NCBI RefSeq assembly: GCF_963853765.1
Contig: NC_088858.1
Span: 7,006,001 to 7,070,000, forward strand
Direction of reading: 5' to 3'
Origin: Magallana gigas
Lineage: Eukaryota
Length of the DNA stretch: 64,000 nucleotides
Part shown: piece by piece, positions 9,622-62,198 of the stretch
How the letters are laid out: the number at the start of each line of letters is the position of its first letter
Numbering within the stretch: the first letter of the stretch is position 1
The notes under the pieces: generated by a model
Databases searched by the model: none
What the model saw: only the letters and a program-made list of their open reading frames with translations
Told to the model about the DNA's origin: nothing
Made by a program: the position numbers and the translations under genes

Positions 9622-9674
9622 TATATATAGGGGACGGAAAATTCACACACTAGACTGGACAGATCTCAACCAAG
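9622..9674 (+). promoter_or_regulatory. TATA box and short non-coding exon 1 of the Gly-rich gene
   Basis: TATATATA at 9622-9629; donor CAAG|GTAAGA at 9675; pyrimidine-rich acceptor AG at 9931-9932, 1 nt before the ATG. Confidence 0.65.
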
Positions 9675-9933
9675 GTAAGAGGGTCTCAAAAAGTTATCCA
9701 ATATCTACAACCGTTCTTAAAGGGTAACTCTCATCTGTATAACCATGTATAATTGTGTTAATCAAAAACTTTTCTTTGTTGTAAAATCAGATGTTCATTA
9801 CGTTAACAATTTACAGATTTTACGCACTTATTTTAAAGCTATAATAGAAATTATTAAAAACTTGGAATTCTATGGTCTTGAATACATATCGTGCAATATT
9901 AAGTTGCTTTCAATGGTTTCTTCCTCTATCAGC

Positions 9934-11322
9934 ATGAAGTCGTTTCTGTTTCTACTGAGCGTCGCGTGCTCCTGTTATGGACTTCACATCCTGCCGTGTG
10001 AGCCTGGAGACCCGGGGCCCCTGGGATGTGATGCCTACCAGAGAAACGGTGGCCGCCTAGACGTAGGTGGTGCCGGAGGTGGAGCCATGAATTCCATCGG
10101 GTTCGATCAGAATCAGAACGCCGGTTTTGGAAACGGACTTGGTTCCAATTTCCTGGAGCCAAGGCTCGAATTTGGAATGGACGGAGGAGTAGTGAACGAC
10201 TTTAACAATGGATTTGGTCAAGATGTCGGACTGGTCGATACTGGATTCGACAACGGCTTCCAAAATGACTTATCAGGGCTCAGTCTTGACTCCAATATCG
10301 GACCTGGGGGATTTGATCCCAGTCTCGGGGCTGGAGGATTTGACGCCGGTGTCGGCGGTGGATTTGACGCTAGCTTTGATGTGAACTCCGGTTTAGATGG
10401 GCCTTTCATTGGAGGGGGAGGTGGTGGTGGTTTTGATGGGTTCGACAACGGACTTGGAGGGAATATTGGCGGGCCATCCATCGGAGGAAACTTTGGCGGC
10501 GGGAAAGGTGGAATAATCGGGGGACCCTCGGTGGGGGGATTCAATGAAGGGTTTGGATTTGATGGAAACCTCGGTGGGGCAGACTTTGGACAGGACATAG
10601 GCTTTGGTGGTGCTGGTATTGGTAAAGGCAAAGGATTCGGAGGTGCCATCGGCAGTGGTGCAGGATTTGGAAAAGGAAATGGTATCGGTGGTGCCATCGG
10701 TGGTGGTGCAGGATTTGGAAAAGGAAAAGGTTTCGATGGTGGTATCGGCGGTAATGCAGGATTCGGAAAAGGCAAAGGTTTCGGTGGTGGCATTGCTGGT
10801 GGTGCAAAATTTGAAAAAGGGAAAGGCTTCGGTGGAGGTATCGGTGGTGGGAAGTTCGGTGGATCCCTAGGACCATCTTACCCTAAAAGAAAAGGCTTTA
10901 ATATCGACAGAAGATATAATAAAGGCTTCGGAGGTGGTTCTGGATGGGGGTCAAGAGGAAAGGGAATTATAGGGGGATCTCACGGAATCATGGGAGGAAA
11001 AGGCATTGGTGGAGGTAAAGGTATTATTGGAGGTATTGGAATCGGGGGCGGTTTCGGATTTAGAGGCGGACTCGGCAAAGGATTCGGTAAAAACAGAAGA
11101 ATGAACTACGGACCACAGTTGGGACATTCTTTGAAACCACGCATTGGAAAACGGCCAATTTTCCGTCATAGACGTCCAAACATATTCCCGATAAAAAGAC
11201 CTTACCCCAGCTTTGGAATTCGAAGTCCAGTCTCAATGCTACCAAAATCATACGGAAGAGTTTCTAATTATCCAAAGAATATGCCAATTAAGCCGATCCG
11301 ACGAATGGCGTCCGGTTACTAA
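9934..11322 (+). CDS. Secreted Gly-rich low-complexity protein, 462 aa (acidic G/D/F block, 16-aa GKGKGF repeats, basic R/K/P/Y tail); shell-matrix/shematrin-like architecture
   Basis: Long GC-richer ORF. The real start is probably MKSFLFLLSVACSCYG (signal-peptide-like) right after the splice acceptor, not the ORF-track start at 9745. Ends in RRMASGY*. Candidate 3'UTR intron 11333-11482; AATAAA at 11624. Confidence 0.9.
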   Translation: MKSFLFLLSVACSCYGLHILPCEPGDPGPLGCDAYQRNGGRLDVGGAGGGAMNSIGFDQNQNAGFGNGLGSNFLEPRLEFGMDGGVVNDFNNGFGQDVGLVDTGFDNGFQNDLSGLSLDSNIGPGGFDPSLGAGGFDAGVGGGFDASFDVNSGLDGPFIGGGGGGGFDGFDNGLGGNIGGPSIGGNFGGGKGGIIGGPSVGGFNEGFGFDGNLGGADFGQDIGFGGAGIGKGKGFGGAIGSGAGFGKGNGIGGAIGGGAGFGKGKGFDGGIGGNAGFGKGKGFGGGIAGGAKFEKGKGFGGGIGGGKFGGSLGPSYPKRKGFNIDRRYNKGFGGGSGWGSRGKGIIGGSHGIMGGKGIGGGKGIIGGIGIGGGFGFRGGLGKGFGKNRRMNYGPQLGHSLKPRIGKRPIFRHRRPNIFPIKRPYPSFGIRSPVSMLPKSYGRVSNYPKNMPIKPIRRMASGY

Positions 11323-36432: not shown

Positions 36433-39259
36433 CTATCCCATGAACCCGCCGGGGAACACTGAAACCAGAAAAAGACAGTCAAGAAATGTTTGTTTGCAAT
36501 AACTAGTATCATATTAAAAAATATATAAATAAAAACAATGTGTTTATGAATTATTAGAATATACTAAATATAAAAGAGTTATGAGAGTTTTATTAAATCA
36601 TATTTTACAGCATTAATTTAAGGAATAAGGAATCAATCTTTTTAAGTATTATTAAGTGATTATATACGGTTGGGGTGATCAAATCCAATTCCCTTCGGGG
36701 TTTATGATAGATTTGATCACACCTGATCGTATTTGATCGACTCAAATTTAAATTCCTTATAACCTATATTTTATATTAGTTATAAGAGATGCTATTTTAA
36801 ATTATTCTCCAATATACTACGAATGTCGTCAGTAAATGTATAGACACCCCATATTTTGTCGAATCACGGGTTTTTTTTAAAGTAGCATATAGAGAACTGA
36901 ATGTTGAGAAACACATGTAAGGCTTTCACTGATAGTTAGAGGTTAAACGTTAAACTATGTCGTTTTTTCACGTCTTACGTAGCAAGGGACAATTTCAGAT
37001 TTTTGTAAAATTGAGCAATACAGTGCTTGAAATCGAACGAGTGTTGCTAAAATTCATGAAATGGTTCTTCATGATTATCATTAGTTAGAGGGACGTCTCC
37101 TGTTGAATATGGTATGCAATATGTAGGCCCCTTACGCAAATAACATGAGAGAATCAGGAGTAAATTGAGAATTTTGCGACTATGACTGTTGGGTTGACTT
37201 TAAACTGTGAAACTGCAAGTTACAGACAGGAGGGTAAAAAACACGGAAAGCAGGTGGATGGGACATTGTAAACTATACACCAGTAAGTTTCTGAAATGTA
37301 AAGGTGCAAGCTACACGCAGTACGGAAAGCCAACTCTTTGCATGGTATAAGCTGGTGGAGGTCTTAAAAGCTGAAAAATCATGAAAAAGTGGACGAATAT
37401 GAAAGGGTCGAAATCTTAGAAAAACCACTTTGTAGAAAATATTACATGTTCTGACTAGTAATTTTTTTCAGAATTGGTGATGGGCATTATTAAGAGTGAA
37501 TTAAAGGTATTTGTATAAAAGGAAACAGAGAAAATTCTGGTTACAGAAGACACATCACCTGGCTACAGTGACACCCCTGCGAGTGTGTTCGGATTGTTTT
37601 CTTTATCGTTGCTAAGTATGTAATAAATCCAGAGGTGCTCGAATGAAAAATTCACGAGACTTCACCGAGATTTGTTCAGTTCCTGTGAAATTTCGAGAGG
37701 AAGTATGAGTGTTCGGATAATATTCTCAAAATACGTTAGTACTGGTGGATTTTCATATCATATCCTATTGTGATTTATGTTAAAACATCAACATCTTTTA
37801 AGATGTATGTCTTATTTCACCATCTAGCGGTTTTTTAAATCATTCGATAATACTCGAAACAGAGTTATCGTTCGTGTTCAATGAGTGGTTGATAATATAA
37901 ACTTTGGGTTGCTTAATAAATTCATAGACATGTTTGATGTTTGATGTTGTGGTGTGTAATACAATGTTTTAAAAAAATAATGTGTGAATGTTTTGCATAA
38001 AAACTTAGTATATCGAGCCATTTTTAAGGAACATTCTGCATAAAATAGTACAGTCTGTTTCACTATTAGTGTTATTACTAGGTCAGGCGCGGATCGAAAA
38101 TTAATTCTTAGGGGGATGTCTACTACGCATGTTAATTGTCGCAACAGCAGAAAAAACTATTTTTGTATTGTCACATTTACTTCTAGGACACATTTTACCC
38201 ACCAATTAATGAAGATAAAGTTTAAAATCAATAAACCTCTAGAATTTATATTTGACTACAAGTACCTAGATTCTCTAAAATAGACTATAAACACGAGGCA
38301 CGATTTTTACTGCGAAACTGAAAGTGTCAAATAAAACCTCGTGATTTAAAATTTAAATGACAATAACATTCGCAGGGGTGAGTGAGTTGTATAAAAAAAC
38401 TGTCCTGTACCATCTTAGTACCAGTAAGCGATACGTAATGCCTCGGATGAGCTCAGTATGGCTGTTTTAATCTAATTACCTCCTTTTACACTTGCATTGC
38501 ATATTTGTATATTAAATAGATAAAAATGTACCATTTATCATTGTATAAAATTACCCTTAAATTGGTGAAAATATGATACAAGTTATCTTTACAAAGAAAT
38601 AAGTACGTGCATTTCATAAATCTCCGAAAAAATGTCGTCTGCGTGTCATTCCGATTGGTTGCCTGTGATTTATTTCTATGTAAACTATTTCTTACAAAGC
38701 TACTGAGTTTACTAGGAATAGTCGTTAAAACTCTATTGAGGAGAGACCAGCAAATCCGAACTGCTGGTAGAACAGAAGTAAAGTTCTTGTTATTGTGAAT
38801 GTTGCAGAATAACCCCTTTTGGTTTATAAAATATTGTATGAAATATTAATAATTTCAAAAAAACATTTCTCGAGTCGACCTTGGAGATTACTAGTATTCT
38901 GCAACATTCACACAAATTCTTGCTTTCTTTTTTAAACGGTTGTTAGTTGTAAGAATATACAAGTTAATATATTTACTTGGACCTGGACCGGCTCCGGGAA
39001 AGCCGACTCCTGGAAAGCCGCCTCCGGGGAAGAATGGCATCGGAGCAGGGAATGGATTAAATGGGTTGAAGTTGGTTTGAATAGGGTAGGGTACCACGAC
39101 CGGAAGAGGTTGGCGCCGAAAGCGGTTAAAGATGAACGGAAGTGCCAGTCCCGCCAGGAAAGCGCCCCCTGTGCCGATGTTTCCGAAGCCTGTCGTCTGC
39201 GCTGTTGTCATTGCCATCACGGACATGAAGATCAATGCGACGAGATTTCTGGTCAACAT
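36433..39259 (-). CDS. Secreted Pro/Phe/Gly-rich peptide, 102 aa: join(39259-38977, 36458-36433)
   Basis: MLTRNLVALIFMSVMAMTTA-QTTGFG...FPGAGPGP + MFPGGFMG*. Donor CCAA|GTAAAT at 38976 and acceptor TTTCAG at 36459 match in phase 1, and the last exon continues the FPGG composition. Acceptor 6 nt before the ATG. Confidence 0.82.
37572..38380. mobile_element. 809-bp non-autonomous DNA transposon, copy 1 (TIR CACCCCTGCGA(A/G)TGT, 5-bp TSD AGTGA)
   Basis: TIRs at both ends; AGTGA at 37567-37571 and 38381-38385; lies in the coding intron of the 39259 gene. Confidence 0.85.
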
Positions 39260-39916: not shown

Positions 39917-40727
39917 CACCCCTGCGAATGTTATTGTCATTTAGATTTTAAATCACGAGGTTTTATTTGACCCTTTCTGTTTCGCAGTAAAAACCGCGCC
40001 TCGTGTTTATAGTCTATTTTAATCTAGGTACTTGTAGACAAATATAAATTCTAGAGGTTTATTGATTTTAAACTTTATCTTCATTAATTGGTGGATAAAA
40101 TGTGTTTTAGAAATAAACAAGACAATACAAAAAATAGTTTTTTTCTGCTGTTGCGACAATTAACATGCGTAGTAGAGATCCCCTCTAAGAATTAATTTTC
40201 GATCCGCGCCTGACCTAGTAATTACATCAATAGTGAAAGAGACTGTACTATTTTATGCAGAATGTTCCTTGAAAATGGCTCGATACACTAAGTTTTAGGC
40301 AAAACATTCACCCATTAATATTTTAAAAACATGGTATTGCACACCACAAGCATCAAACACGGCTATGATTTTATTAAGCAACCCAATGTTTATATTATCA
40401 ACCACTCTACACGTGGTTGAACACGAACGATAACTCTGTTCTGAATATCATCGTTTAATTTAAAAAAAAACGCTAGATGGTGAAATAAGACATACATCTT
40501 AAAAGATGTTGATGTTTTAACATAAATCAAGATAGAATATGATATGAAAATCGACCAGTACTTACGTATTTTGAGAATATTATCCGAACACTTATACTTC
40601 CGCTCGAAATTTCACAGGAACTCAACAAATCTCGGTGAAGTCTCGCGAACTTTCATTCGAGCACCTCTGGATTTATTACATACTTAGCAACGGTAAAGAA
40701 AACATTTCAAACACATTCGCAGGGGTG
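39917..40727. mobile_element. 811-bp non-autonomous DNA transposon, copy 2, inverted relative to copy 1 (5-bp TSD CTAAA)
   Basis: Alignable along its length to the reverse complement of 37572-38380; CTAAA at 39912-39916 and 40728-40732. Confidence 0.85.
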
Positions 40728-40952: not shown

Positions 40953-41034
40953 TTTACCGGGTGGCAGTAAATACAAAATTTACATCATTACAACTTTTCT
41001 GGTTGTAATCTTGTATTTACTGCCATCCGGTAAA
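40953..41034. repeat. 82-bp hairpin
   Basis: TTTACCGGGTGGCAGTAAATACAA paired with TTGTATTTACTGCCATCCGGTAAA. Confidence 0.65.
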
Positions 41035-45517: not shown

Positions 45518-45796
45518 TCAGTAGTGTTTGCGGTTGTGGTGGTAGACGATGACTGGTGGCTGGGCGATGGGGAAGGGGGCGATGAATGGTGGGGGTGGGG
45601 GAATGATGACACGGCTTGGGTTGGGTCCCAGGCTGTTGGCGGCAAGAAAGGGAGCGACGAAGGACAGCGCCAGGGCTGGGTTGTTGCTGATGAAGCTGTT
45701 CAGGTTGTTGAGGAAGGTGTTTGTGGTGATGGTCTGAGAGTAGACAGATCCTGTCAGGCACAGGACGGCCAAGACAACAGCGACGCAGGACTTCAT
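45518..45796 (-). CDS. Secreted Asn/Pro-rich peptide A, 92 aa (paralog of 47834)
   Basis: MKSCVAVVLAVLCLTGSVYS-QTITT...IIPPPPPF...HHNRKHY*. Acceptor 3 nt before the ATG; 3'UTR donor GTAAGT 17 nt after the stop; terminal exon with AATAAA near 45131. Confidence 0.88.
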   Translation of the reverse strand: MKSCVAVVLAVLCLTGSVYSQTITTNTFLNNLNSFISNNPALALSFVAPFLAANSLGPNPSRVIIPPPPPFIAPFPIAQPPVIVYHHNRKHY

Positions 45797-46189
45797 GGTC
45801 TGTGACAGAAGAGAACAACATTTACTTATCGAATGAAACTGACATGCTAAACAGTGTTTGGCAAATTGCGCCTAATAAAGACAGTCGTACTTGGGTTCTG
45901 TTCTATTATGTTATTAAGACTTGCATTAGCAATTTCTGTGGCGAAAAATAATGCATGATGCAAAATCTTTTTTCGTGGACACTTTTAAATATGATTTTAA
46001 AGAAAAACCTATTTTTTGAACATATCCTCTTTTTTTCAAGAGACACCAATGATTTCAAATTGGTCTTTGAACAGAAAACAAATTGACATTTCAAAAACCC
46101 CGCTTCTGCTACGAAATATTTTTTTTTCCATTATTATTTTTCATTTACATTGACCAGAATACTTGAGCTTAGAGTAGCTCGACACATAC

Positions 46190-46254
46190 CTGTATATGAA
46201 AGAGTGAATCCAAAGAATGAACTGAAGATTCTAGAAACTCGAACTACTTTTATA
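46190..46254 (-). promoter_or_regulatory. TATA box and non-coding exon 1 of peptide A
   Basis: TATAAAA on the minus strand at 46248-46254; donor ACAG|GTATGT at 46189. Confidence 0.55.
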
Positions 46255-47548: not shown

Positions 47549-47610
47549 TATATAAAGGGGAGAAATAATGGAGTCAAACTATAGTTTCTCTATCGCACAA
47601 ACTGTAACAG
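47549..47610 (+). promoter_or_regulatory. TATA box and non-coding exon 1 of peptide B
   Basis: TATATAAA at 47549-47556; donor ACAG|GTAAGT at 47611; acceptor at 47827. Confidence 0.65.
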
Positions 47611-47833
47611 GTAAGTTAAAACAAGAAGGTTTTTTTTCATATTTATCTAATGACTGATCATTACAATTATAAATGTTGCAAATCATTTTTAGAATCAATT
47701 TCCATTCGCTAAGTTTAGGCAAGAAATGCAACAACTGTAATGAAAATGAGTTGCTTATAGACGAACTTTAATGTTGTGTTGTGCATTGATTTTTAACTGC
47801 AATGTATTTTTTCTTTCACCTGGCCAGGTAATA

Positions 47834-48109
47834 ATGAGGTCTTCAGTCGCTGTTGTCTTGGCCGTCCTGTGCCTGACAGGATCTGTCTACTCTCAGACCA
47901 TCAGCACAAACACCTTCTTCACCAACCTGAACAACTTCATCAGCAACAACCCAGCCCTGGCGCTGTCCTTCGTCGCTCCCTTTCTTGCCGCCAACAGCCT
48001 TGGACCCAACCCCAGCGGTGTCATCATTCCCCCACCCCCACCATTCATCCCCATGGTCCCTCCCATGGCAATGATGCCACCCATCATTGTTAGGAAGCAC
48101 CACTACTGA
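47834..48109 (+). CDS. Secreted Asn/Pro/Met-rich peptide B, 91 aa (paralog of 45796)
   Basis: MRSSVAVVLAVLCLTGSVYS-QTIST...PPPPPFIPMVPPMAMMPPIIVRKHHY*. The real start is 47834, not 47771. 3'UTR donor GTAAGT at 48127. Confidence 0.88.
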   Translation: MRSSVAVVLAVLCLTGSVYSQTISTNTFFTNLNNFISNNPALALSFVAPFLAANSLGPNPSGVIIPPPPPFIPMVPPMAMMPPIIVRKHHY

Positions 48110-51100: not shown

Positions 51101-53083
51101 AATAGCGAGTCAATAATTTTATATATGGTAGTAACAATATGAGCTTTAATTATGATGTCAAACATTTTTAGCAATAAATTATCACTCACTATCACTAATT
51201 ATCACTAACTGTTTGGAATACTATTCCGAATTCTTGTGTCACCGTACATGTAGGTACTGGCACAATAACAGTTTCTCATTTTTTTTAAGCATACTGCGTG
51301 CGCTTAAAGAATCTTGATGTATTTTAAAAAAATCACGCAAAAACATAATGTACAAATGTTTATCTCCTTTTTTTGTTTGTAACGTACATTTAGAAGTATT
51401 ATGTGTTTATGTACAGTGTACATCTAAGCGATTTAATATTATTAAATCTGAAGAAATTTTGTTAGCGAACAGTTTTTTAGAAAGTCAGTTTCTTTAGCCC
51501 ATCAACGTTAACACTGGGGTGGGGGATATTGTCTTCATTGCGGTTAGTCAGCCATTCTTTCACTCATCGAATTCGACTCGCGTTATATATTTAAGGAATG
51601 AATTCAATATTTATTTGTTTTATACGATATAAAATGGTTTGGGGCAGTTTACGCTTTATAAACCGCGTAGGCAACATTCTTTATACGATATAAAATAATT
51701 TTTTAACCAATCAGAAAGTGCGTTACAACCAGAATTAAATTATTTATAAATATATACATATTTTAAAAGTTATTAACTAAGTTTAAAAATCTTTCGTATT
51801 CATGGTCGGATAAATGTGTCTATTTACCTAGTACATGGACCCAAATTTTTTACGACTTGTTTTTTGTTTGTTTGGTTTTTTTTTTAAATAAAACAGATTT
51901 GTCCTTTTAAATGAATCTTTAACAGAATTTTCTCTAATTCTATTTAGTTCATAAAATGACAACTGATTTAAAATTAGGGGTACCGCAGGGAACACGTTTC
52001 GCTTATGCAATACTCTCAGAATGCTTGTTATGTCTAATCATATGGGAATCGTCATTTACCACTTTATAACCAGGTGGGAACACAATTCCACCATGCAGTT
52101 AAAAAGTTAGCTGTAGAATGTAACTCTACGGGAAAATTTTACGCACCTGTCAACACGACTTTCCGTAGTACTAGACCTGGAGTTCTGCAGCTACATACTA
52201 CATGTAGGATATAGAGTACCGTTTACCGTTTATTGCATGATTTATCAACATAAAAATTGGATATTACACGCACACTTCTTTCCTTGAACAATCAATTAAA
52301 CCGATAATTTGCGTGTGTTCGAGTGGAACACTTTTTCAATTTTTTTTTACTTATCAGTTTTGGACCTTCTCTAAAAAACCAATATGGATTGTTATACGCC
52401 TGCACTGCTTATCAGTGAACAAATCAACAGATATATATGAGTGAAAGTAATGCCCTTGTTTGTGTATTGCTAAACTCATGTTTCTTGTCTAATCGGTGTC
52501 TTTTACAATTGTACATGTCTCGCCTGCAGCCAATAACACCTAATAATGCATGCAATCACGTCACTTGTAAGTGTTACGTAACCCGAATGACGTATAATTA
52601 CCCGATCGATATTCATCATAATCAAAACGATTGGTTGTAAAAGTGTTACCCAACTGATGAAATAATTGTTTGTTTATCTCAAAAACATATAAAGTACACC
52701 ACTTTTGTATATATTTATACTATTTGTCTATCTGACATATACTTGTAATAAATCAAGATAAATAAAATCTTATTTTTATCTTTCCCTTTAAAAATATAGA
52801 TAACGGTACAGTTTCAAAATGATGTATAGTTTTTAATGAAATTGTTATTATTCTCCTGACGTACATTTTTTGGTTAATTTTTGGCTCTGACAGAACCAGG
52901 AAGTTCCCTTGTTATAAACTTCACCCACAAAGACTTACAACACCGATCACGTGATAACAATGAAGTGGTCAGTTGAAGAGATCATTGTGACCTAACTGAC
53001 ACGTTTATAACGACTTGGACTCGTTAACAATATATTACGTAACTCAATGATTGGTTTACAGCCTTTTATTCTTTTATCACAGC

Positions 53084-53138
53084 TATATAAGTAAAGGTCT
53101 GAAGAGATGTGTTTTAATCAACATCAAGAAACAGCTTG
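53084..53138 (+). promoter_or_regulatory. TATA box and non-coding exon 1
   Basis: TATATAA at 53084-53090; donor TTG|GTAAGT at 53139; acceptor TTCAG at 53721, 6 nt before the ATG. Confidence 0.65.
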
Positions 53139-53727
53139 GTAAGTTACAGTTACAAGAAGTTGTCGTGTTCGATTAGGACACGATTGAGATACGATTCACG
53201 ACCGATTAAACCTGGATGTAGACTGTACTATACGATTATAATATGTTATGATTAAGAAAAATAACGTTCATTGAAAAAAAACCCCAAACTTGACAGTTTC
53301 TGGGTTCTTCCTAATGTTAAACTTAAAAGATTTCGATGGTCGTGGTCAGTTTTTAGACTTTTTTTATCTCCCTTAGAAGAAGAGCTCTGTGTAAAAAATG
53401 AAATACCCTACTTTAAAGAGGTTAAATATATGGAATTTTCTCTACAAATTAATAGTTTTAAGCTTCACAATCTTTAAATCTGAGGTAAATTTGAGGGTCA
53501 ATTTACTGACCATCCAGCCCCCTATAACACGTGCATCGTTTAAGCGGTATCTTCCACAAAGTGCCCACATAAACCGTATTATTGCTTTTACACTTGGTAT
53601 TAATTTCATAAAATTAAAACATAACTTATAATTTAAAACTACTTTTCTGCTTGGATATTGTTATGATTTTACATGCAATGATTTTAATTTAAGTAAACCT
53701 TTCCATGCTTTCTCAATTCAGATAATC

Positions 53728-53997
53728 ATGAAGAAACTCATTGCCACGTGTCTTCTACTATGTGTAGTGTCGTCTGCTCTCGGCCAGTTCCCAACGAACT
53801 TTTTCCCGGGATTTGGACCCGTGTTTGGACCTTTCGCTTCAGTGGGACTCCTTGACAGGATTACCGGTGGGCCTGGACTTCTCCCTAGAGTGATTAACGG
53901 ACCAATCGGAGGGGGATTCCCCACAGCTCTGGGTGCAGCCGGCTTATTCAGCGGTGGCAACGTGCCGTTCAATCTTGGTCTGCTTGCCATTGGTTGA
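53728..53997 (+). CDS. Secreted hydrophobic Gly/Pro/Phe/Leu-rich peptide, 89 aa
   Basis: MKKLIATCLLLCVVSSALG-QFPTNFFPGFGPVFG...LGLLAIG*. Signal peptide and cluster-type gene architecture. Confidence 0.85.
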   Translation: MKKLIATCLLLCVVSSALGQFPTNFFPGFGPVFGPFASVGLLDRITGGPGLLPRVINGPIGGGFPTALGAAGLFSGGNVPFNLGLLAIG

Positions 53998-54984
53998 CGC
54001 GACAGTGACGTCATAACCATGGACTTGTAAGAACTTGTGTCATACGTAGACAATCTAGACATTTACGTTTCCTACATCAGTTAAGCTATCGGAAGTAGCG
54101 TGTTGCTTGAAAAAGACAATATTATGGAAACAGAAGTATCACTTCACTGTTGATCATTGTCTCCGCATATATCATAATAAAGGTTGTCTTCGAAAAAAAG
54201 GGTATTTGTCTTTATACAAGTAATAGTCAGAGTAAAAATATGTGTACCCAGTTCAATAACCGTCCCCGATTTATTATATTGTCATATTTTCAAGAAGTAA
54301 TAGAATGCGTTTCACTTAAAAAAAGATTTTTTGAATGCGTCAATAATTCAGAAACAATAAGTCTATGTATATTGTTTGACTTAGGAAGTCTGAAAACTCG
54401 ATATCAAATGAAATGTTTTCCCTTCTTACATATACCAAAATCATGTTCTTTGCTTAAAGTTTAATCTGGTAACGCAGTTTAAAGTATGTTAACTTACGTA
54501 TCTACTGATTGGTGGTCAAATGAGTATGACTTTTTGAGTGTTGATTTTTCTAAATCATCGCGTGTCAGTGGTGTTACTGGTATTATAGTACATATACTTG
54601 TAAAGTAATAACCCACGGTATTGAACGTGTTTATGTTCTATCCAGCATTAAGAGTACGAAGAAATCTACTTCATGCAATCATATATAAAAATTCCCTATG
54701 AAAGTGTCACAAAAATATGCCCAATATCTAATCATAAAGTCACAAGTTGTTTGTATATATAAGAGTTTTTATTTTATTTTGTCCTTGTTTAAAACAAAAC
54801 AAAAACAGCCAGGAAAAAACCTGTAAAGAAAGAAACAGGACACATTATTAATATTGCGTATTCTTATATATATTGAATTGACTGTTTTTTAATGTAGTTT
54901 TTTAATATGCTCTGAGAATTCATCGTAATATTGAAGTCTTTTACAAAAGGAGCACGTGTTCATTGTAAGTCTTACCTATAATAT

Positions 54985-55883
54985 TTAATACATGGCACCG
55001 CTGGAACCTAAAGCATATCCTCCCTGGGAATAGGCGGATGCCCCGCTGTATCCAGCCTGGGGATAGGAAGATGCATATCCTGATTGGGCATAAGAAGCTT
55101 GGGGATAGGATGATGCTCCGGCATATCCTACTGAGGGATAGCTAGATGTTTGGTATCCTGTAAAAAGTGTAATGTAGAATTGAAGAATTATTTCATCATT
55201 CATTAGTGTTGCAAACGTGCTCGTGATGTTGACAAATACTAAGGCTTTTACTAAACACTGCATTTTATGATCCCATCACCAGTGTGGTTATTTTCTATAT
55301 CATCACCTGCTTTGTATAGTAGCTAACATGTATGTTTATCAAAAAAAAATCTGTTAGATTAAAATTGGAATTTTTCAATACCTGAAACCATAGGTACACC
55401 AATGGCGGAAGACTTTCCGTATCCGGTCATCTTTTTACCATATCCGCTCATCTTCTTTCCGTATCCACCGTACTTTTTCTTTCCATATCCGGATCCTCCC
55501 ATGCGTCCCCCAATCATACCGCCCATTCCTCCAAATCCGCCAGCACCCATTAAACCACCAGCGCTCATTAAACCACCAGCGCTCATTAAACCACCAGCGC
55601 TCATTCCTCCAATGAGAGGGACGCCTCCCATTCCTCCAAAAACTGGGCCACTTCCCATTCCGGGTCCTCCGATAATGATACCAAAGGAGTCGTCATCGAA
55701 GAAATCATCATCGTAAAAGTCATCGTCGAAGAATCCATCGTCGAAGTTTCCATCGTCAAAGAAACCATCATCAAAGAACCCATCATCCCCGCCAAACCCG
55801 ACGATAAATGGTCCCCTGCGCCACTGGGCGGAACAGCTGGCCAATACGACGGCAGCCAAGGTCAAGGTCAGGAAAGATTTCAT
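54985..55883 (-). CDS. Secreted block-copolymer protein 1, 224 aa (DDGFF acidic block, Gly/Met block, GYGKK block, Ser/Tyr/Gly/Ala tail): join(55883-55382, 55157-54985)
   Basis: MKSFLTLTLAAVVLASCSA-QWRRG...VPMVS|G|YQTSSYPSVGYAG...SSGAMY*. A phase-1 GT-AG intron joins two separate ORF-track ORFs. Confidence 0.88.
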
Positions 55884-56126
55884 GGTTTCTACAAGAATAC
55901 AGAACGTACATCTCAACGTAAAACAGAATACAAAATGTAGGGTATAAAAAAGGGTTTTTTTCAGTTTCAAACATCTCGTTTAGATTTAAAGTGAATAACA
56001 AAAACTACAATTGCTCAGAATTTTTTTCTTGATATATTCTTATTTCTACATGGTAAAGGTGCAACAATTTATGCTTTTAATAACTAAATCGTTTTAAACT
56101 CGCGCGAATGACATGCCACTACTTAC

Positions 56127-56177
56127 CTAGAGAGAAGAGACACTGGTACCTACCCACCGTTCGTTGGTCTATATAAA
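56127..56177 (-). promoter_or_regulatory. TATA-like box and non-coding exon 1 of block protein 1
   Basis: TTTATATAG on the minus strand at 56169-56177; donor CTAG|GTAAGT at 56126; acceptor 5 nt before the ATG. Confidence 0.6.
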
Positions 56178-58278
56178 GGGTTCCATGCTGTAACGTATAC
56201 GAACTGTTTGGCTTAGGGGTGTCGGGCAGACACGAACGTTATGCGTCGCTTACCAAACATGTCTGCCTATCGCTTCCTGGTCCAGAAAAAATCACAGCAG
56301 TTAGGAAATCCCCCTCATATGTAGGTATAGATAATTTGTTCTTGCATCTCTGGTATTTCAGGTTTTTAGTTCAATGCAATGACTAAACGGTGTAAAGCGG
56401 CGGCAAACAATATAAATTTAACGATACTGTAAAGGGGTCGCTGAACGAACACATCAGCGGGTATTATAATATTGGTTATCCAGGTCCAATTTATCACCTT
56501 TGTTATACAAATTTTTAAATATTGTTTTACCAGTGTTTTGCAACTTGAAAATCTGGTCTAAGATCACTCAGAATAAAAATTAATATTAATTGAAATTGTG
56601 CTGAAAATCAATTATTCATACCAATAAAAAATTTAAAAATAGGGATTTTGACAAATTATTTATTCATTCACTTCATTAAACATTACATTATTTTGTGCAA
56701 AGATCTGAAGCTGTACTTGTAAACAAGGACTTCATTTTGACTTCACATTTTATTTACACCCGTGTGGCAACGTACTTTGAAAAAATTGCCCACTTTAATT
56801 TTTTTCCAAAGTGCGTTAAGTGGTAAATTCAGGACGAAATCAACGCACTTTGAAAATTTTTCCAAAGTGCGTTAAATTTTGGACTAAGTTATCCCACTTT
56901 GATAATTATTTTCAAAGTGCATTATGAAGGTACATCAACATTTTTTAGGATTGAGACACTTCACTGACTTTGAAAAAATATGTATAAATCACAAAATAAC
57001 ACTAATGAATCTAATTTACCATCTTTAAGGACGGGGATGGGGACGGGGGTGGGGGTTATACCAAAGGGTTTGTTGTTTCACGGTGGGGAACATATTTCCA
57101 CAGACTAAAACATTTTCCAAAAATGTAAAGTTTCAAAATATAATTAAGAAATATAAATTAAAATGAAAATTTACTTTAATATCTAACGTAAACATGTGAT
57201 TATTAAATTTTTTATGCACATATCGGCCGCTAAATAATATTTTCCTCGCTCATAAAGACCGATTTCAATGAATTTTTTAAGACCCCGCGTTAGCAAAACT
57301 TTTGTTTAAAAATCGATAATTTGATAACAAATTATATATTGATATAAATTGATTAGGATTTGATTATACCTTTTAGTAGAAAACTTAGTTTTTGAATATC
57401 TGACAGAAATTCCGAAATATTTGGATGTAAAATGTAGGCGGGAAACGGGCGTTAGCGTTCGCAGTTCTTTATGCTCTAGCTCCTGTGAAATTTAAAGCCT
57501 TAAATTTTTAAAATAATTTGAAGAACTCCATGATTGATTATTTAAAACGCAAATAATGCACATGTTTTATGCCAAGATTTTCAGACATTGATAAAAAGTA
57601 ATCCGAACCTAATTTTTTTACATATGGGAATAGATTTTTGAATATTATTCATACTAGACTTCGTCACGATTGTGCACTAAATAATGATTTATTTCGATGT
57701 AATATTATCAACAGTCCACTCTGATCGTGTGGTAAGATCGAAGATACTTACCATTATTTTTTCACATGTAATAAATATAAAGATGCTAGAAATGTTCTAT
57801 TTAATGACGTTTTTCAAATTGTAAATCTTAACATTGTCAATACTCATGTTTTACTTTGGGGTGACAGTTCAATAACTGACAATGAAAACAAGAATTTATT
57901 TACATTAGTTTATAACTTTATCAAAAACACTGAAAGATTTAACTGATCTTATATCTACAAGCACACCGTTGTTAATTATATGCATGTCTATGCTATGTAT
58001 ACGTCCATTCTATCCACTGACCTTTATTATATTGTGTACACATATATTGTATTGTTATACTTTCATGTTAAATACTGAAGTCTGATTGGTTAAGACGCAG
58101 TTAATAATATTTACTATTACCCTCAGCGTTAGCAACGCACTTGGCAACGGGTAACATTAAAAAATGTTACATGCGCGAAAATTATGCGCGTACGGTTCGC
58201 TGTAGAATTCACGTTATTCCTATATAAAAGCAGTAAAATTTTCTTAAAATTTTTAAAAAAGACATTCAGTATAACAAA

Positions 58279-58421
58279 ATAAATAGTGCCTGTTTGGGAG
58301 GATAACAGTTGAAATTGACACCCCTCGAAAACCATTGTCAACCTCCGCTTCGCGTCGGTTGACAATGGTTTTCTCGGAGTGTCAATTTCAACTGTTACCC
58401 TCCCAAACAGGCACTATTTAT
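58279..58421. repeat. 143-bp near-perfect palindrome at the end of a ~370-bp repeat-like element (~58050-58421)
   Basis: ATAAATAGTGCCTGTTTGGGAGG..GACACCC..AAAACCATTGTCAACC / loop TCCGCTTCGCGTC / GGTTGACAATGGTTTT..CCTCCCAAACAGGCACTATTTAT. Confidence 0.75.
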
Positions 58422-60984
58422 ATATTATGTCTCTGTATTGGGAGAGGGCGGTCTAAGTTATGGAACTTGTGCCCAATCCCAATTGTATTTTTGTACAATA
58501 AAAATATGTTCAAATCAAATCAAATCAAATCAAGTAATCCGAACGATCCGGGTCATTTTTTTAGTGTTGAATATTGAGACCAATTGTGTCACGCTTGAAT
58601 AAAGACCCTAGTCTGTTGGAAATTGACCCGCATCGTAGAATTTTGATCACGAAACCGGTTCTAAATTCAACAGCAAATAAGCACACATAAATGAACACTT
58701 TTTTACAGTGTACATCTTTGATTTACTCATTTAAGAATAATTACAATTCATTCATGTTTATAGTTTTTTAGATTGATATGTTTAATAAACGGTCTCTCTA
58801 AAACATGAACCATTTCACTGATTATGTCTAGATTTATCATATTAACCTTTCATGTAGTAAAATATTTGAAATATAATAACACATATAAAGTTGAGAGTGC
58901 ATGTATATAATCGCTATGATTGCAATATTAATATTTGAAAATGATGTCTGTTATAAGATTAATTTCTGTCGATTAACATGGTTACACGTGTATCATTTCT
59001 TCTAAAAATAACCTTTTTTTTTTTACATATTTGCTGAAGGGTAGTAAATACAAAAATCTGTAATATATCATATTGTATAATTTTGTATTTACATTTACCT
59101 AGCAATTTGAAATTATCATATTGTAAATCGAAAAGTTTTTTTTGGTGGGTGTAAATACAAAATTTACAGTATAACATATTGTGAATTTTGATTTTAAAAC
59201 CACTAAGTCTATCTTAACTTTAATTATTTAAATATTTTATGTACATCCTCCCAGTAAATTTACAGCAAACTTTACAATACGACATATTTACACCTACTAG
59301 TAAACTTTACGATATGACAAATTGATACACTAACAGTAACCACTTTATTATTTATAATTTAAATACATGTACACGTGTATTTCGGAAACGTTTACTTAGT
59401 GGTTTTAGGCACGCTTCACGTACAATTTCATGCATATTCATTTCTGCACACATGTAACTGTCTAAATCCGTCTTGAATCTTATTTTTCATTAGTTTAGGC
59501 CATCCTTTGTATTTTTTATTAGTTGTTAAAGACTTTTTTTTTCCAAAATAGGGTCGGTGGGTCGAAATAAAAATTCGACATATTTTCATAAAAGTTATAA
59601 GTGTAATAGTAATACAAAAACCGACTCGCTTCCAGCACTAAATATTGATAACAAAATATTATCCTAAAAATTTACCCTTTGTTAAAATATCATTTTATCT
59701 ATTTTATATAATATGTTGATTTTTCTAGTGGATACATTGGTTTAGATAGATTCATTTACGGACACCACAAAAAATCCCCTCCCCCTAATTTCTGGAAAGG
59801 GTAGGTCGGTTTTGATAAACAACTAATAGAAATGGATTTATTTGGATAGTGTTATCATATGCTATTATAAATATGTGCAATAAAGAGAATTGAAAACATC
59901 GGGGGGGGGGGGGGGGGTTCTGGAAGAAAAATAATTTTGCATATTGGAATGTATAGCAACAGCTAGTTGCTGCCATTACCCAAACTCCATAATCATATCC
60001 TTAATTGGTTTATGAGATGTGATGGTATGCTAGACGCTGTTTTATTTTTTGATCAATATTGTTTTTATTCTTAATAAATATTTGAATGATACAATAAACA
60101 TAAAATAAAATTTACATAAATAATAGGTATATAAATACACAATATACATACAAGGAATAAAACATTCATGTTAATATATAGATATAATGAAAGTATACAC
60201 TATTTGTATTATAAATAATTATACCTTGATCTCAGGTGGAGAGAGCTAATATAGGCTATTTTTGCCCGCTGTTCAATCCATATTCACTTATATACTTTAT
60301 AGAGAGCAGACAATGTTTAATAAAACGTTAACAGAGATAATGATTCCATCTAGTGTAAGATTTTAGTTTTTAATGAATATACGCAATCATGTAACACGAA
60401 CCTATTCTTCCTGTACAAATACATATAACTGGTGTTGGGCACACATGTCCAGAATAAGTTACTGAACTTGACCACCTTCTTTCTACACAAATATATAATT
60501 AATATACTTATATAATTTTCAGAATATTGAATTTCTCAACTAGATATGTCAATATGGCATACTGCTTAAATTTTGGTTTTTTTTTTTAAAATTACTTATT
60601 CACTTACTTTGCACATTCTATGTAGTAATAAAATTCGCCAGCAACAAAGGTTTTATTATCTTATAACAAACTCTCAAACTTCTCTGAAATAAGTGTGCAG
60701 CGATCAGAAAGATTTTGCTTAAGAAAACTTATATCACATCTCTAATATAGGTTAAAAATATAGCTACATCCACATATATATAAAACTAAACAAACTAGGA
60801 TCACTCGTGTGACATCTTAAACTATATATACTGGGTTCCTCCGACACACATACAAATGTATATATTATTTTGGCATAAGAGTTTAAATGGAGAAGAATCT
60901 TTGTCAAAATCTACAATAAAGGATTTTTCATCATATCAAGCCTGATGAAAGAAGAAGGGAGAAGGATACTCAGGCATAGCCAGC

Positions 60985-61615
60985 CTAATAATAGGATGAT
61001 GCTCCAGCATACCCTACTTGTGGATAGCTTGATGTATGGTATCCTGTAAAAAATGATTTCATAGTTCAGTGAACACGATCCTATTTTGCGAATTATAAAA
61101 AGAGAAAATATTGCATTACTTAAAGATCAAATTTGCTTACCTGAAACCATAGGTACAGCAATAGCGGAAGATTTTCCGTATCCGGTCATCTTTTTACCAT
61201 ATCCGCTCATCTTCTTTCCGTATCCGCCGTAGTGTTTCTTTCCATATCCGGATCCTCCCATGCGTCCACCGATCATACCGCCCATTCCTCCAAATCCACT
61301 AGCGCCCATAAATCCATCGACACCAGCGCCCATTCCTCCCATAAATCCACCAGCGCTCATTCCCCCGACGAATGGAGAAAAGCCTCCCATTCCGAATCCT
61401 CCCCTCCTTGGCCCGCCAAGGAAGAAACCAAAGGAGTCGTCATCGAAGAAATCATCGTCGTAGAAGTCATCATCGTAAAAGTCATCATCGAAGAATCCAT
61501 CATCAAAGATTCCATCATCCCCGCCAAAGCCGACGATAAATGGTCCCCTGCGCCACTGGGCGGAACAGCTGGCCAAAAGGACGGCAGCCAAGGTCAAGGT
61601 CAGGAAGGATTTCAT
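60985..61615 (-). CDS. Secreted block-copolymer protein 2, 177 aa, paralog of 55883 with a truncated terminal exon (could be a pseudogene): join(61615-61141, 61043-60985)
   Basis: Same signal peptide and blocks as 55883. The terminal exon reads GYHTSSYPQVGYAGASSYY* with TAG at 60985-60987 and a second TGA five codons later, in sequence homologous to the open tails of the paralogs. Confidence 0.75.
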
Positions 61616-61761
61616 GGTTTCTACAGGAATACAGAACGCATATCTCATGGTAAAACGAAATACAAAACGTAGGGTATATAGAACATTTTTCAATTCAAGT
61701 AAGTGTTTGTTACAAAATGTAAAGATTACATTCGCTCATATTTGTTACAAGATTCACGCTC

Positions 61762-62198
61762 CTGACCGGATACGGAAAATCTTCCGCAATGAGTGTACCA
61801 ATGATTTCAGGTAAGCATATTGTTCTTTAAGTAATGCAATATTTTAAAATCTTTCAAATAAGAAAATATTGAATTATATATATTTTATTTTTCAAGGATA
61901 CCAGACAGCAGGCTATCCGTCAGGAGGATATGCTGGAGCCTCCTCCTATTCCCAGGCAGGATATACCGGATCATATCCCCAAGCAGGATACAGCGGAGCA
62001 TCTGCCTATTCCCAGGCAGGATATACCGGATCATATCCCCAAGCAGGATACAGCGGAGCATCTGCCTATTCCCAGGGAGGATATGCCGGATCATACTCCT
62101 ATCCCCAGGGTGGATACAGCGGAGCATCTGCCTATTCCCAGGGAGGATATGCCGGAGCTACCCCTTACTTTTCTTCTTCACTTGGGGGTCAATACTAA
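61762..62198 (+). pseudogene. 5'-truncated inverted copy of the block-protein family (end of the coding exon, intron 61811-61897, intact Ser/Tyr/Gly repeat terminal exon)
   Basis: LTGYGKSSAMSVPMISG|GTAAGC matches MTGYGKSSAIAVPMVSG|GTAAGC. Acceptor TTTCAAG then GYQTAGYPSGGYAGASSY...SLGGQY*. No signal peptide or upstream coding exon found. Confidence 0.65.

What the first reader, a model, noticed from the sequence alone, without database searches (positions are those of the whole stretch)
9622..62198. A ~53-kb cluster of ten secreted low-complexity genes plus a thaumatin-like gene: candidate bivalve extracellular-structure gene complex
Seen: every coding gene I could identify between 9.6 and 62.2 kb encodes a signal peptide (ATGs at 9934, 15631, 21723, 25677, 29281, 39259, 45796, 47834, 53728, 55883, 61615), and no housekeeping gene interrupts them. 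Apart from TLP, each is a biased-composition or repeat polymer (G/D/F, DKYPV, P/F/G, N/P, DDGFF-GM-GYGKK-SYG). Known: molluscan shell, periostracum, ligament and adhesive proteins are dominated by secreted repetitive low-complexity proteins; pearl-oyster shematrins are Gly-rich and end in a basic motif plus Tyr. Clustered, rapidly diverging structural genes also make up the vertebrate EDC and SCPP loci and insect chorion loci. Inference: this is a co-regulated structural 'toolkit' locus for one secretory epithelium, which homology-based annotation would leave as scattered hypothetical proteins.
Basis: partly seen in the sequence, partly recalled or inferred. Interest (0 to 1): 0.88.

Follow-up and report, generated by a model that had tools for sequence, protein, structure and literature searches.

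The report
Oyster cluster of secreted low-complexity genes
This stretch of the Pacific oyster genome holds a dense run of oyster-only genes for secreted, repetitive proteins that look like shell or matrix building material, but they are switched on in at least two different sets of samples, and gene clusters of this kind are already known in molluscs.

Summary
The window is Magallana (Crassostrea) gigas chromosome DNA. All 11 named ATGs exist and open reading frames with signal-peptide-like starts. One gene is a true thaumatin-family gene. Nine of the other ten are low-complexity; g2 is not.

Corrections:
- The + strand Ser/Tyr/Gly ORF at 61869-62198 does not belong to the minus-strand gene at 61615. 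It is an inverted 99% copy of the 3' end of a paralog outside the window.
- The cluster runs about 20 kb past the window, to about 81.8 kb, and adds four genes. That makes 15 genes and one fragment in about 72 kb.
- The N gap lies in satellite DNA between genes.

The families have paralogs only at this locus. Relatives were found only in oysters (Crassostrea, Saccostrea).

Most genes share three features: a splice-acceptor-like site just before the ATG, a predicted mature N-terminal Gln, and a C-terminal Tyr, often after basic residues as in pearl-oyster shematrins and KRMPs.

RNA evidence: g3, g4 and the spliced thaumatin gene occur together in one RNA sample. A sample that holds g9/g10 has none of them. 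So there is not one co-regulated unit.

A matrix function is inferred, not shown; no tissue or proteome link could be made. Unchecked first-stage notes list several similar clusters elsewhere in this genome. Verdict: a new member of a known kind.

The parts
9934..11322 (+). g1: 462-aa secreted Gly/Phe/Asp-rich protein with a 5x 48-bp GFGKGKGF-type repeat. The N-terminal two-Cys motif and the C-terminal ...RRMASGY are conserved.
   Evidence: ORF. [quoted passage not shown] Saccostrea orthologs have near-invariant N- and C-termini and a variable repeat core. Tandem repeat.
15631..15651 (+). g2 exon 1 (MITVYKK, GTATGT donor). Inferred only.
   Evidence: Sequence reading; no RNA or annotation support obtained.
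16395..16760 (+). g2 exon 2: rest of the signal peptide plus a basic 103-aa mature protein ending LGYY. Not low-complexity.
   Evidence: Single copy in the genome.
21723..23438 (+). g3: 571-aa secreted protein with about 32 DKYP(V/M) pentapeptides and a Lys/Tyr/Arg-rich tail ending RRRSSGY. The 3' UTR runs to about 23700.
   Evidence: The 3' end is at depth 243-312 in RNA-like run X1. RNA-like runs hold 61-72% of its words. Single copy.
25677..26261 (+). g4: 194-aa secreted Gly/Ser/Phe/Asn/Asp protein ending RRRGRRRPRY. Poly(A) site near 26342.
   Evidence: X1 contigs at depth 45-180, with an A8 tail at 26342. Single copy.
29160..29281 (-). Thaumatin-like gene, coding exon 1 (signal peptide and start of the domain).
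   Evidence: An X1 contig joins 29160 to 28966 (193-nt intron, GT..AG on the minus strand). The contig carries 20 further 5' letters that do not lie on the genome beyond 29289, which fits a 5' UTR intron.
28369..28966 (-). Thaumatin-like gene, coding exon 2. The whole protein is 239 aa with 16 Cys.
   Evidence: Pfam PF00314 at 7.6e-61. The only thaumatin match found in the genome.
38976..39259 (-). g6 first coding exon: signal peptide plus a Pro/Gly/Phe-rich basic segment, ending at a donor-like A|GTAAAT. The rest of the gene was not found.
   Evidence: Single copy. Lies between 0.8-kb inverted repeats at 37572-38380 and 39917-40727.
45518..45796 (-). g7: 92-aa secreted Asn/Pro-rich protein ending NRKHY.
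47834..48109 (+). g8: 91-aa paralog of g7 (79-82% identical), head-to-head with g7, ending RKHHY.
53728..53997 (+). g9: 89-aa secreted Gly/Phe/Pro/Leu-rich protein ending LLAIG.
   Evidence: The exact protein is in the collection, next to UniProt K1PVT5 and A0A8W8IAH7. RNA-like runs hold up to 62% of the g9+g10 stretch.
55382..55883 (-). g10 main coding exon: signal peptide, DDGFF acidic block, Gly/Met block, GYGKK repeats.
   Evidence: The homologous 5' UTR exon maps near 56127-56323 by alignment of a congener cDNA contig.
54985..55157 (-). g10 last exon: Ser/Tyr/Gly tail ending GAMY. The whole protein is 224 aa.
   Evidence: Donor and acceptor read from the sequence. The same splice pattern occurs in the congener cDNA.
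61141..61615 (-). g11 main coding exon, paralog of g10 (83% identical DNA).
60985..61043 (-). g11 short last exon (...GYHTSSYPQVGYAGASSYY). The whole protein is 177 aa.
   Evidence: Same splice in the C. angulata NCBI model XP_052702539.1 and in a spliced 1109-nt Logan contig.
61763..63579 (+). Inverted duplicate of the 3' part of g12 (end of exon 1, intron, Ser/Tyr/Gly exon 61897-62198, and downstream DNA). A 5'-truncated gene fragment with no signal peptide.
   Evidence: 99.2% identical over 1819 bp to 68749-66933, window-relative. Reading frames.
34166..34302 (.). Assembly gap in non-coding DNA between inverted 21-bp minisatellite arrays (32947-33315 and 34690-34974). Not part of any gene.

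Best explanation
This is an oyster-restricted tandem array of secretory genes. It spans about 72 kb (window 9.9 kb to about 81.8 kb) and holds 14 low-complexity or short Pro/Gly-rich genes, the genome's only detected thaumatin-like gene, and one truncated inverted copy.

How it arose (partly shown, partly inferred). It grew by local duplication: g7/g8/g13/g14, g10/g11/g12 plus the fragment, and probably g1/g3. Repeat turnover inside single large coding exons then diversified the copies.

Shared design. Most members have an untranslated first exon, an intron ending 0-6 nt before the ATG, a signal peptide whose predicted cleavage leaves N-terminal Gln, and a C-terminal Tyr, often after Arg/Lys/His.

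Proposed function (inferred). The products are extracellular matrix or framework proteins of the shell-forming system:
- acidic Asp/Phe blocks would bind calcium carbonate;
- Gly/Met and Gly/Phe blocks would give a flexible insoluble scaffold;
- Lys/Tyr repeats and terminal Tyr would be substrates for oxidative cross-linking.

Expression (shown). The array is used in at least two separate programmes: g3/g4, with the thaumatin gene also present, versus g9/g10.

What is shown and what is not. Gene existence, the paralogy, the shared architecture, the restricted distribution and the split expression are shown. The matrix function and the tissue are inferred from composition and analogy.
For: - Organism and gene reality: g1 is an NCBI and UniProt M. 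gigas protein. It is conserved in two Saccostrea species, with near-invariant termini and a variable repeat core.
- RNA support: g3's 3' end and g4 are at high depth, and g4 carries a poly(A) tail. The thaumatin gene is spliced. A spliced congener cDNA matches the g11 model and reveals a 5' UTR exon. RNA-like runs hold g3 and g9/g10.
- Extent of the cluster: four more members lie past the window. None lies in the 20 kb upstream or in 82-164 kb downstream.
- All tested families are confined to this locus.
- Restricted distribution: a profile of the g7 family found only 3 clusters among 1.84 billion representatives; the one cluster that carries a name is M. gigas and the other two are unnamed Logan contigs. 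The g10 family has 3 hits, all Crassostrea-like.
- Shared features: 12 of 15 ATGs have an acceptor-like site within 8 nt upstream, against 13.8% of all ATGs in the region (p about 1e-8). This is confirmed by RNA for the thaumatin gene and the g10 family. Predicted mature Gln occurs in 13 of 15 genes, and C-terminal Tyr in 9 of 11 complete low-complexity models (the background rates are my assumptions).
- Analogy from the literature: shematrins and KRMPs are Gly/Tyr-rich with an RnKmY C-terminal signature and a role in cross-linking (PMC3896809). Shell-matrix genes are tandemly clustered in Pinctada and Lottia (PMC4759782). Lineage-specific repetitive secreted proteins dominate mantle secretomes, including that of C. 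gigas (PMC5400390). Met-rich regions are common in insoluble shell and ligament proteins (PMC7591529). Oyster shell-forming cell types are enriched for young, Ostreidae-age and duplicated genes (bioRxiv 10.64898/2026.03.09.710468).
Against: - No tissue, stage or proteome link was obtained. Run identities are coded, and three shell-proteome papers gave no searchable sequences.
- There is no detectable sequence homology to any named shell protein. Published work says shematrin homologs are absent from C. gigas (PMC4759782).
- The small basic Pro- or Gly-rich members (g6-g9, g13, g14) and the thaumatin gene would fit an immune-effector reading equally well.
- The split expression argues against one functional unit.
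- g2 and g6 lack any RNA or annotation support.
- Signal peptides were judged by a heuristic only.
Confidence: 0.55

Rival explanations
1. It is an immune-effector locus. The small cationic Pro-rich and Gly-rich secreted peptides (g6-g9, g13, g14, perhaps g1) would be antimicrobial-peptide-like, clustered with an antifungal-type thaumatin-like protein. The acidic members would be unrelated neighbours.
For: - Mature pI is 9.6-11.7 and mature size 69-92 aa for g6-g9, g13 and g14.
- g13 ends in ...YGK, an amidation-like ending. g14's open frame runs on past ...RHGK, probably into an intron.
- N-terminal Gln is typical of processed bioactive peptides.
- The thaumatin gene is embedded in the cluster and is expressed in a sample without g3 or g4.
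- NCBI naming of Gly-rich oyster genes overlaps with names such as 'ctenidin-like' (PMC12040131).
Against: - The long repeat polymers fit poorly: g1 at 462 aa, g3 at 571 aa with 32 DKYPV units, and g10-g12 with poly-Asp/Phe and Tyr-rich tails.
- C-terminal Tyr after basic residues is a matrix-protein signature (PMC3896809).
- The 'GK' endings of g13 and g14 coincide with donor-like GTAA(A/G) sites and may simply be read-through into introns.
- No match to known oyster antimicrobial peptides was seen. No PADLOC-type or AMP library applies here.
Confidence: 0.15
2. There is no functional unity. The array is a hotspot of local duplication and de novo repeat evolution in permissive chromatin. Its members have been recruited separately to unrelated tissues or stages, and co-location is historical only.
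For: - Expression is split between samples.
- Rearrangement is active: a 99% inverted duplication, a truncated copy, transposon-like repeats and satellites inside the array.
- Every family is locus-specific.
- First-stage notes report several similar clusters elsewhere in this genome (unchecked).
Against: - About eight sequence-unrelated families all keep the same 5' architecture, a Gln start and, mostly, a Tyr end. That points to shared ancestry or a shared processing constraint.
- g3 and g4, from different families, are both abundant in the same RNA sample.
Confidence: 0.2
3. It encodes larval settlement adhesive or cement proteins. The Lys/Tyr DKYPV polymer (g3) and the Gly/Tyr-rich proteins would be DOPA-type adhesive or tanned proteins of the pediveliger foot or of adult cement, rather than shell matrix.
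For: g3 is 14% Lys, 12% Tyr and 13% Pro in short tandem peptides. By my own knowledge, this resembles mussel foot protein decapeptides. An earlier first-stage note (s1-366400) makes the same suggestion.
Against: No expression or proteome evidence either way. A literature search for the motif found nothing relevant. Acidic Asp-rich blocks in g10-g12 and g15 fit mineral binding better than adhesion.
Confidence: 0.1

Closest known systems
Shematrin and KRMP families of pearl oysters (Pinctada), and their tandem gene clusters
   Same: - Secreted proteins with no recognised domains, made of repeats rich in Gly or Gly/Tyr.
- A C-terminal basic run ending in Tyr. The published RnKmY signature includes RKKKY, RRRKY and RRKY (PMC3896809). 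Here the endings are RRRPRY (g4), NRKHY (g7), RKHHY (g8), RRMASGY (g1) and RRRSSGY (g3).
- Lineage-restricted and fast-evolving (PMC5400390).
- Tandemly arranged in the genome (PMC4759782).
   Different: - No detectable sequence homology. Shematrin homologs are reported absent from C. gigas (PMC4759782).
- This array mixes about eight unrelated-looking families plus a globular thaumatin gene, rather than one family.
- Presence in shell and expression in the mantle edge are not shown.
Vertebrate SCPP and epidermal differentiation complex loci
   Same: A dense array of secreted or structural low-complexity genes with little sequence similarity but a common exon plan: an untranslated first exon, with the signal peptide at the start of the next. 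Here, 12 of 15 ATGs sit 0-6 nt after an acceptor-like site. This is confirmed by RNA for two families.
   Different: There is no homology. Common descent of all families here is only inferred; the g1-g3 N-termini match at E 1e-4 and their C-termini do not match significantly. The comparison with SCPP rests on my own knowledge, not on a test.
Abductin and Met-rich ligament or shell framework proteins (Pinctada LMP, NU-5, MRNP34)
   Same: g10-g12 carry Gly/Met/Phe-rich stretches (GFGGMGGMIGG, GGMSAGGLM repeats). These resemble the Gly/Met/Phe composition of abductin and the Met-rich regions found in insoluble shell and ligament proteins (PMC7591529).
   Different: No sequence match was found. 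g10-g12 also have a strong poly-Asp/Phe block, whereas Pinctada ligament proteins are reported to lack acidic regions (PMC7591529). No regular decapeptide array was seen.
Thaumatin-like proteins (PF00314)
   Same: The gene at 29281-28369 is a full member: signal peptide, domain match at 7.6e-61, and 16 Cys.
   Different: Its position inside an array of low-complexity genes, and its apparent single-copy status in this genome, are unusual. It is expressed with g3 and g4 in one sample but without them in another.

Membership tests
Thaumatin family (gene at 29281-28369) | Match to the PF00314 domain above the curated cut-off | tested here: met
   205.9 bits against a cut-off of 27.4, E 7.6e-61, on exon 2 alone.
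Thaumatin family (gene at 29281-28369) | Sixteen conserved Cys and a signal peptide | tested here: met
   16 Cys in the 224-aa mature protein from the RNA-supported two-exon model. The signal peptide was judged by heuristic only.
Shematrin / KRMP | Signal peptide plus Gly- or Gly/Tyr-rich repetitive body | tested here: met
   g1 is 34% Gly. g10-g12 are 28% Gly with Tyr-rich tails. g4 is 20% Gly.
Shematrin / KRMP | C-terminal RnKmY-type signature (PMC3896809) | tested here: met
   g4 RRRPRY, g7 NRKHY and g8 RKHHY fit closely. g1 and g3 have RR..SGY. g2 and g10-g12 end in Tyr without a basic run.
Shematrin / KRMP | Sequence homology to Pinctada members | tested here: not met
   No Pinctada hit for g1, g3 or g10. 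The literature reports none in C. gigas (PMC4759782). The searches were limited by word sharing and a length window.
Shematrin / KRMP | Presence in the prismatic layer and expression in the mantle edge | not testable with these tools
   Run metadata are coded. The proteome supplements searched held no sequences.
Tandem shell-matrix-protein gene cluster (Pinctada/Lottia type) | Adjacent paralogous secreted genes | tested here: met
   g7/g8/g13/g14, and g10/g11/g12 plus the fragment.
Tandem shell-matrix-protein gene cluster (Pinctada/Lottia type) | Products identified in the shell matrix | not testable with these tools
   No accessible peptide or sequence tables.
Abductin | Array of GGFGGMGGGX-type decapeptides and sequence similarity | tested here: not met
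   Only short Gly/Met/Phe stretches. The tandem-repeat finder gives an 18-bp unit 3.7 times in g10. No abductin hit. The abductin motif itself is recalled from memory.
Extensin_1 (PF02095), hit by g3 | Plant cell-wall protein with Ser-Pro4-type repeats | tested here: not met
   The 120-bit hit (cut-off 105) covers only the DKYPV array. It is a repeat-composition match in an animal protein with no Ser-Pro4 motif.
SCPP/EDC-like structural gene complex (works-like comparison) | Shared exon plan across sequence-unrelated neighbours | tested here: met
   12 of 15 ATGs, from 8 of about 10 families, have an acceptor-like site within 8 nt upstream, against a 13.8% background. RNA confirms this for two families.
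SCPP/EDC-like structural gene complex (works-like comparison) | Coordinated expression in one tissue system | tested here: inconclusive
   g3, g4 and the thaumatin gene are together in X1. g9/g10 holders lack them. The tissues are unknown.

The most novel reading that the evidence does not exclude
The array is an oyster counterpart of the vertebrate SCPP and EDC loci. All of its roughly eight sequence-unrelated families, possibly including the recruitment of the thaumatin gene's 5' end, would descend from or be built on one ancestral secretory gene module. That module is an untranslated exon, an intron just before the ATG, a signal peptide, a Gln start and a Tyr end. Sub-blocks of the array would now be partitioned among the different shell-forming cell types or life stages of oysters. 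This would make it a compact model for how new biomineral matrix proteins are born and wired.
Probability: 0.25. Interest if true: 0.7.

Novelty: new member of a known kind. Interest (0 to 1): 0.45.

Why it matters
Oyster shells lack the classic pearl-oyster matrix families, and much of their matrix gene set is unnamed. If these genes are matrix proteins, the locus gives a defined set of 15 genes, confined to oysters, for studying how repetitive biomaterial proteins arise by local duplication and repeat turnover. It would also show how neighbouring genes are split between expression programmes. Finally, it offers candidates (the Lys/Tyr DKYPV polymer and the Asp/Phe-Gly/Met-Tyr proteins) for shell growth, repair and acidification studies in a major aquaculture species. 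The shared Gln start and Tyr end suggest testable processing steps: pyroglutamate formation and Tyr cross-linking.

Tried and rejected
- **Paper searches by identifier.** Searches for XP_019918888, K1PVT5 and the two A0A8W8 accessions found nothing. A search for the DKYPV motif gave one irrelevant hit. A search for the SRA accessions of carrier contigs gave only unrelated papers.
- **Peptide motifs in shell-proteome supplements.** PMC6231486 holds no supplements, and PMC5379566 and PMC10543319 gave no occurrences. This says nothing about presence in shell.
- **ESM Atlas search with g10.** No usable hit.
- **g3 homology search.** I ran it with the whole protein's length filter and it found nothing. 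This was a design flaw, because assembled fragments of a repeat protein are shorter than the length window. It is not evidence of absence.
- **Carrier contigs.** Contigs carrying g1 and g9 turned out colinear with the genome, probably from DNA runs, so they give no expression evidence.
- **Pfam hits rejected.** Extensin_1 for g3 was rejected as a repeat-composition artefact. LPAM_1 (g10) and Glyco_hydro_64 (thaumatin gene) fall below their cut-offs.
- **g6 as a transposon-borne ORF.** Rejected as a multi-copy element because it is single copy. It still lies between transposon-like inverted repeats, and its gene status stays open.
- **g1-g3 shared C-terminus.** Not significant by BLASTP. The N-termini match only weakly, at E 1e-4.
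- **The gap.** It does not break a gene.


Full report
**Identity of the DNA.** The window is G000 contig 6, bases 7006001-7070000. Protein g1 is an exact NCBI protein. [quoted passage not shown] GC content is about 33%, with peaks over the coding repeats.

**Check of the observation.** All 11 ATGs exist on the strands implied, and each opens an ORF whose first 15-25 residues are hydrophobic with small residues at -3 and -1. This is my heuristic; no dedicated signal-peptide predictor was available.

The gene models in the window, with their status, are:

| Gene | Coordinates (strand) | Length, ending | Status |
|---|---|---|---|
| g1 | 9934-11322 (+) | 462 aa | exact NCBI protein |
| g2 | 15631-15651 and 16395-16760 (+) | 128 aa | inferred from GTATGT and ttgacag sites |
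| g3 | 21723-23438 (+) | 571 aa, about 32 DKYP(V/M) units | |
| g4 | 25677-26261 (+) | 194 aa | RNA with poly(A) tail |
| thaumatin-like | 29281-29160 and 28966-28369 (-) | 239 aa | spliced in RNA |
| g6 | exon 39259-38976 (-) | incomplete | then a donor-like site; rest unknown |
| g7 | 45796-45518 (-) | 92 aa | |
| g8 | 47834-48109 (+) | 91 aa | 79-82% identical to g7, head-to-head |
| g9 | 53728-53997 (+) | 89 aa | exact protein in the collection |
| g10 | 55883-55382 and 55157-54985 (-) | 224 aa | splice sites read from sequence |
| g11 | 61615-61141 and 61043-60985 (-) | 177 aa | splice confirmed in relatives |

The thaumatin call is firm: Pfam at 7.6e-61 and 16 Cys. Residue entropy confirms low complexity for every gene except g2 (3.95 bits) and the thaumatin protein (4.09 bits).

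**Corrections to the observation.**
The + strand ORF at 61869-62198 lies within a duplicate (61763-63579) that is 99.2% identical, in inverted orientation, to 66933-68749 in window-relative numbering. That region is the 3' part of a full paralog, g12, whose ATG is at 69176 on the minus strand, outside the window. The copy keeps the last 16 codons of exon 1, the intron and the Ser/Tyr/Gly exon. It has no start codon or signal peptide.
- g11 has its own short last exon. The same splice is used in the C. angulata model XP_052702539.1 and in a spliced 1109-nt Logan contig from a congener. That contig also reveals an untranslated first exon homologous to 56127-56323, upstream of g10.
- The gap at 34166-34302 lies in AT-rich DNA between two inverted arrays of a 21-bp minisatellite, and no gene model crosses it.

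**True extent of the cluster.** I fetched 20 kb upstream and 100 kb downstream. This showed four more members:
- g12;
- g13 and g14 (ATGs at 72414 and 72994, minus strand; paralogs of g7 and g8);
- g15 (ATG at 81804, minus strand; an acidic FWGDDFGDRFDD start followed by a basic Trp/Tyr/Arg-rich body).

Upstream of g1 lie a tyrosine-phosphatase gene and other DNA with no such genes. Downstream of g15 lie a Harbinger-like transposase, a non-LTR element and satellites, and no further secreted low-complexity ORF up to 164 kb. The array is therefore 15 genes and one fragment in about 72 kb.

**Families and distribution.**
- Searches of the own genome place every tested family at this locus only: the g7 family has 4 copies, the g10 family has 3, and g2, g3, g4, g6 and the thaumatin gene have one each.
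- A profile of g7/g8/g13/g14, run against 1.84 billion representative proteins, found only three clusters. One holds M. gigas entries. The other two are unnamed Logan contigs close to g13 and g14.
- The g10 family found three relatives, all Crassostrea-like.
- g1 has orthologs in Saccostrea cucullata and S. echinata. Their N-terminus (LHILPCEPGDPGPLGCDAY) and C-terminus (SNYPKNMP..PIRR..SGY) are almost invariant, while the Gly-rich repeat core changes in length. That is the pattern of a functional gene under selection with an unstable repeat.
- The g1 and g3 N-termini match weakly (E 1e-4). Their C-termini do not match significantly.

**Shared features across unrelated-looking families.**
1. 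Twelve of 15 ATGs have a pyrimidine tract plus AG within 0-8 nt upstream, against 13.8% of all ATGs in the 124-kb region (binomial p about 1e-8; 8 of about 10 families). RNA confirms a 5' UTR intron at this spot for the g10 family. For the thaumatin gene, the RNA contig stops matching the genome at 29289 with 20 letters left over.
2. Predicted signal-peptide cleavage leaves Gln as the first mature residue in 13 of 15 genes.
3. Nine of 11 complete low-complexity models end in Tyr, several after Arg, Lys or His: RRRPRY, NRKHY, RKHHY, RRMASGY, RRRSSGY.

The p-values use assumed background rates, and paralogs are not independent. By family the signal remains strong.

**Expression.**
- On the stretch 23320-29319, the RNA-like run X1 covers only three places. 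These are g3's 3' end (depth 243-312), g4 (45-180, ending in an A8 tail at 26342), and the thaumatin gene (about 15, with the 28966-to-29160 joint). Intergenic depth is zero, so X1 behaves as RNA.
- X25 is the best RNA-like holder of the g9/g10 stretch. It has none of these three genes.
- X33 has only weak g4.
- The raw poly(A) RNA run X21 has thaumatin reads but no g3 or g4.
- The 14 best RNA-like holders of g3 and of g9/g10 are disjoint sets from mostly different studies.

At least two expression programmes therefore exist, and the thaumatin gene is used more widely than g3 and g4. Tissues are unknown because run identities are coded. g1, g2, g6-g8 and g12-g15 were not tested for RNA.

**Interpretation.** The best reading is an oyster-restricted array of extracellular matrix-type proteins. 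It rests on composition and on published analogies:
- Shematrins and KRMPs combine Gly/Tyr-rich bodies with an RnKmY ending linked to cross-linking (PMC3896809).
- Shell-matrix genes are tandemly clustered in Pinctada and Lottia (PMC4759782).
- Lineage-specific repetitive secreted proteins dominate mantle secretomes, including that of C. gigas (PMC5400390).
- Met-rich regions mark insoluble shell and ligament proteins (PMC7591529).
- Oyster shell-forming cell types are enriched for young and duplicated genes (bioRxiv 10.64898/2026.03.09.710468).

None of these papers names these genes, and I could not link them to any proteome. The genes are not shematrin family members: no homology was found, and the literature reports none in C. 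gigas.

Three rival readings remain open:
- an immune-effector locus, built on the small basic Pro/Gly-rich peptides plus the thaumatin gene;
- a duplication hotspot with no functional unity;
- larval adhesive proteins.

**Novelty.** Clusters of lineage-restricted repetitive secreted genes are a known kind. First-stage notes of this scan list several similar clusters elsewhere in this genome (unchecked). This locus is a new, well-delimited member. Its distinctive points are the mix of families with one gene plan, the embedded single-copy thaumatin gene, and the split expression.

Noticed in passing
window 61763-63579, and 66933-68749 in window-relative numbering (locus L007 2933-4749): An inverted duplication 1.8 kb long and 99.2% identical, with a 3.35-kb spacer. 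It copies the 3' half of g12 next to the start of g11, where g11's untranslated first exon would be expected. It is either a very recent rearrangement or a local assembly fold-back.
   Followed up: partly
window 32947-33315 and 34690-34974: Two arrays of a 21-bp minisatellite (higher-order 63 bp) in inverted orientation around the assembly gap. They read as long MLKYQHV pseudo-ORFs that are not genes.
   Followed up: yes
window 30650-31376; also 94970-97055 in window-relative numbering (loci L009-L010): A 172-bp satellite with 4.3 copies in the window and a larger inverted array about 64 kb away. A related piece occurs at 63686-64076, and about 300-bp relatives occur on many chromosomes.
   Followed up: no
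window 37572-38380 and 39917-40727: Inverted repeats 0.8 kb long and 90% identical flank g6. Further copies lie near 100.8-101.5 kb in window-relative numbering. They look like a transposon, and g6 sits between the arms.
   Followed up: partly
window 27986-28320: A short stretch just downstream of the thaumatin gene is covered in all four runs, with many reads that run on into unrelated sequence. It is an expressed dispersed repeat, not part of a local gene.
   Followed up: no
window 21723-23438: g3 is abundant in an RNA sample, yet neither its exact sequence nor any relative within the length window is in the 5.8-billion-protein collection. Short-read assemblies and annotation probably break on the 480-bp DKYPV array.
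   Followed up: partly
window 28369-29281: The thaumatin-like gene was the only match to its own exon in the whole genome search, so it may be single copy in this oyster.
   Followed up: partly
L007 8121-8414 and 8656-8994; window 38976: g13, g14 and g6 all run into a GTAA(A/G) donor-like site right after their Pro-rich part. The apparent ...GK or longer endings may be intron read-through, and a small unseen last exon may exist.
   Followed up: no
L011-L012 (window-relative -7000 to -2900); L008-L009 (86.5-89 kb); L021 (106.8 kb): The genes flanking the array are a protein tyrosine phosphatase upstream (VHCSAGVGRTG motif), then a Harbinger-type transposase pair and a non-LTR retroelement downstream.
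   Followed up: no
window 58047-58428, and 79456-79837 in window-relative numbering: A 382-bp repeat, 99% identical, is shared between the g10-g11 spacer and the region upstream of g15.
   Followed up: no
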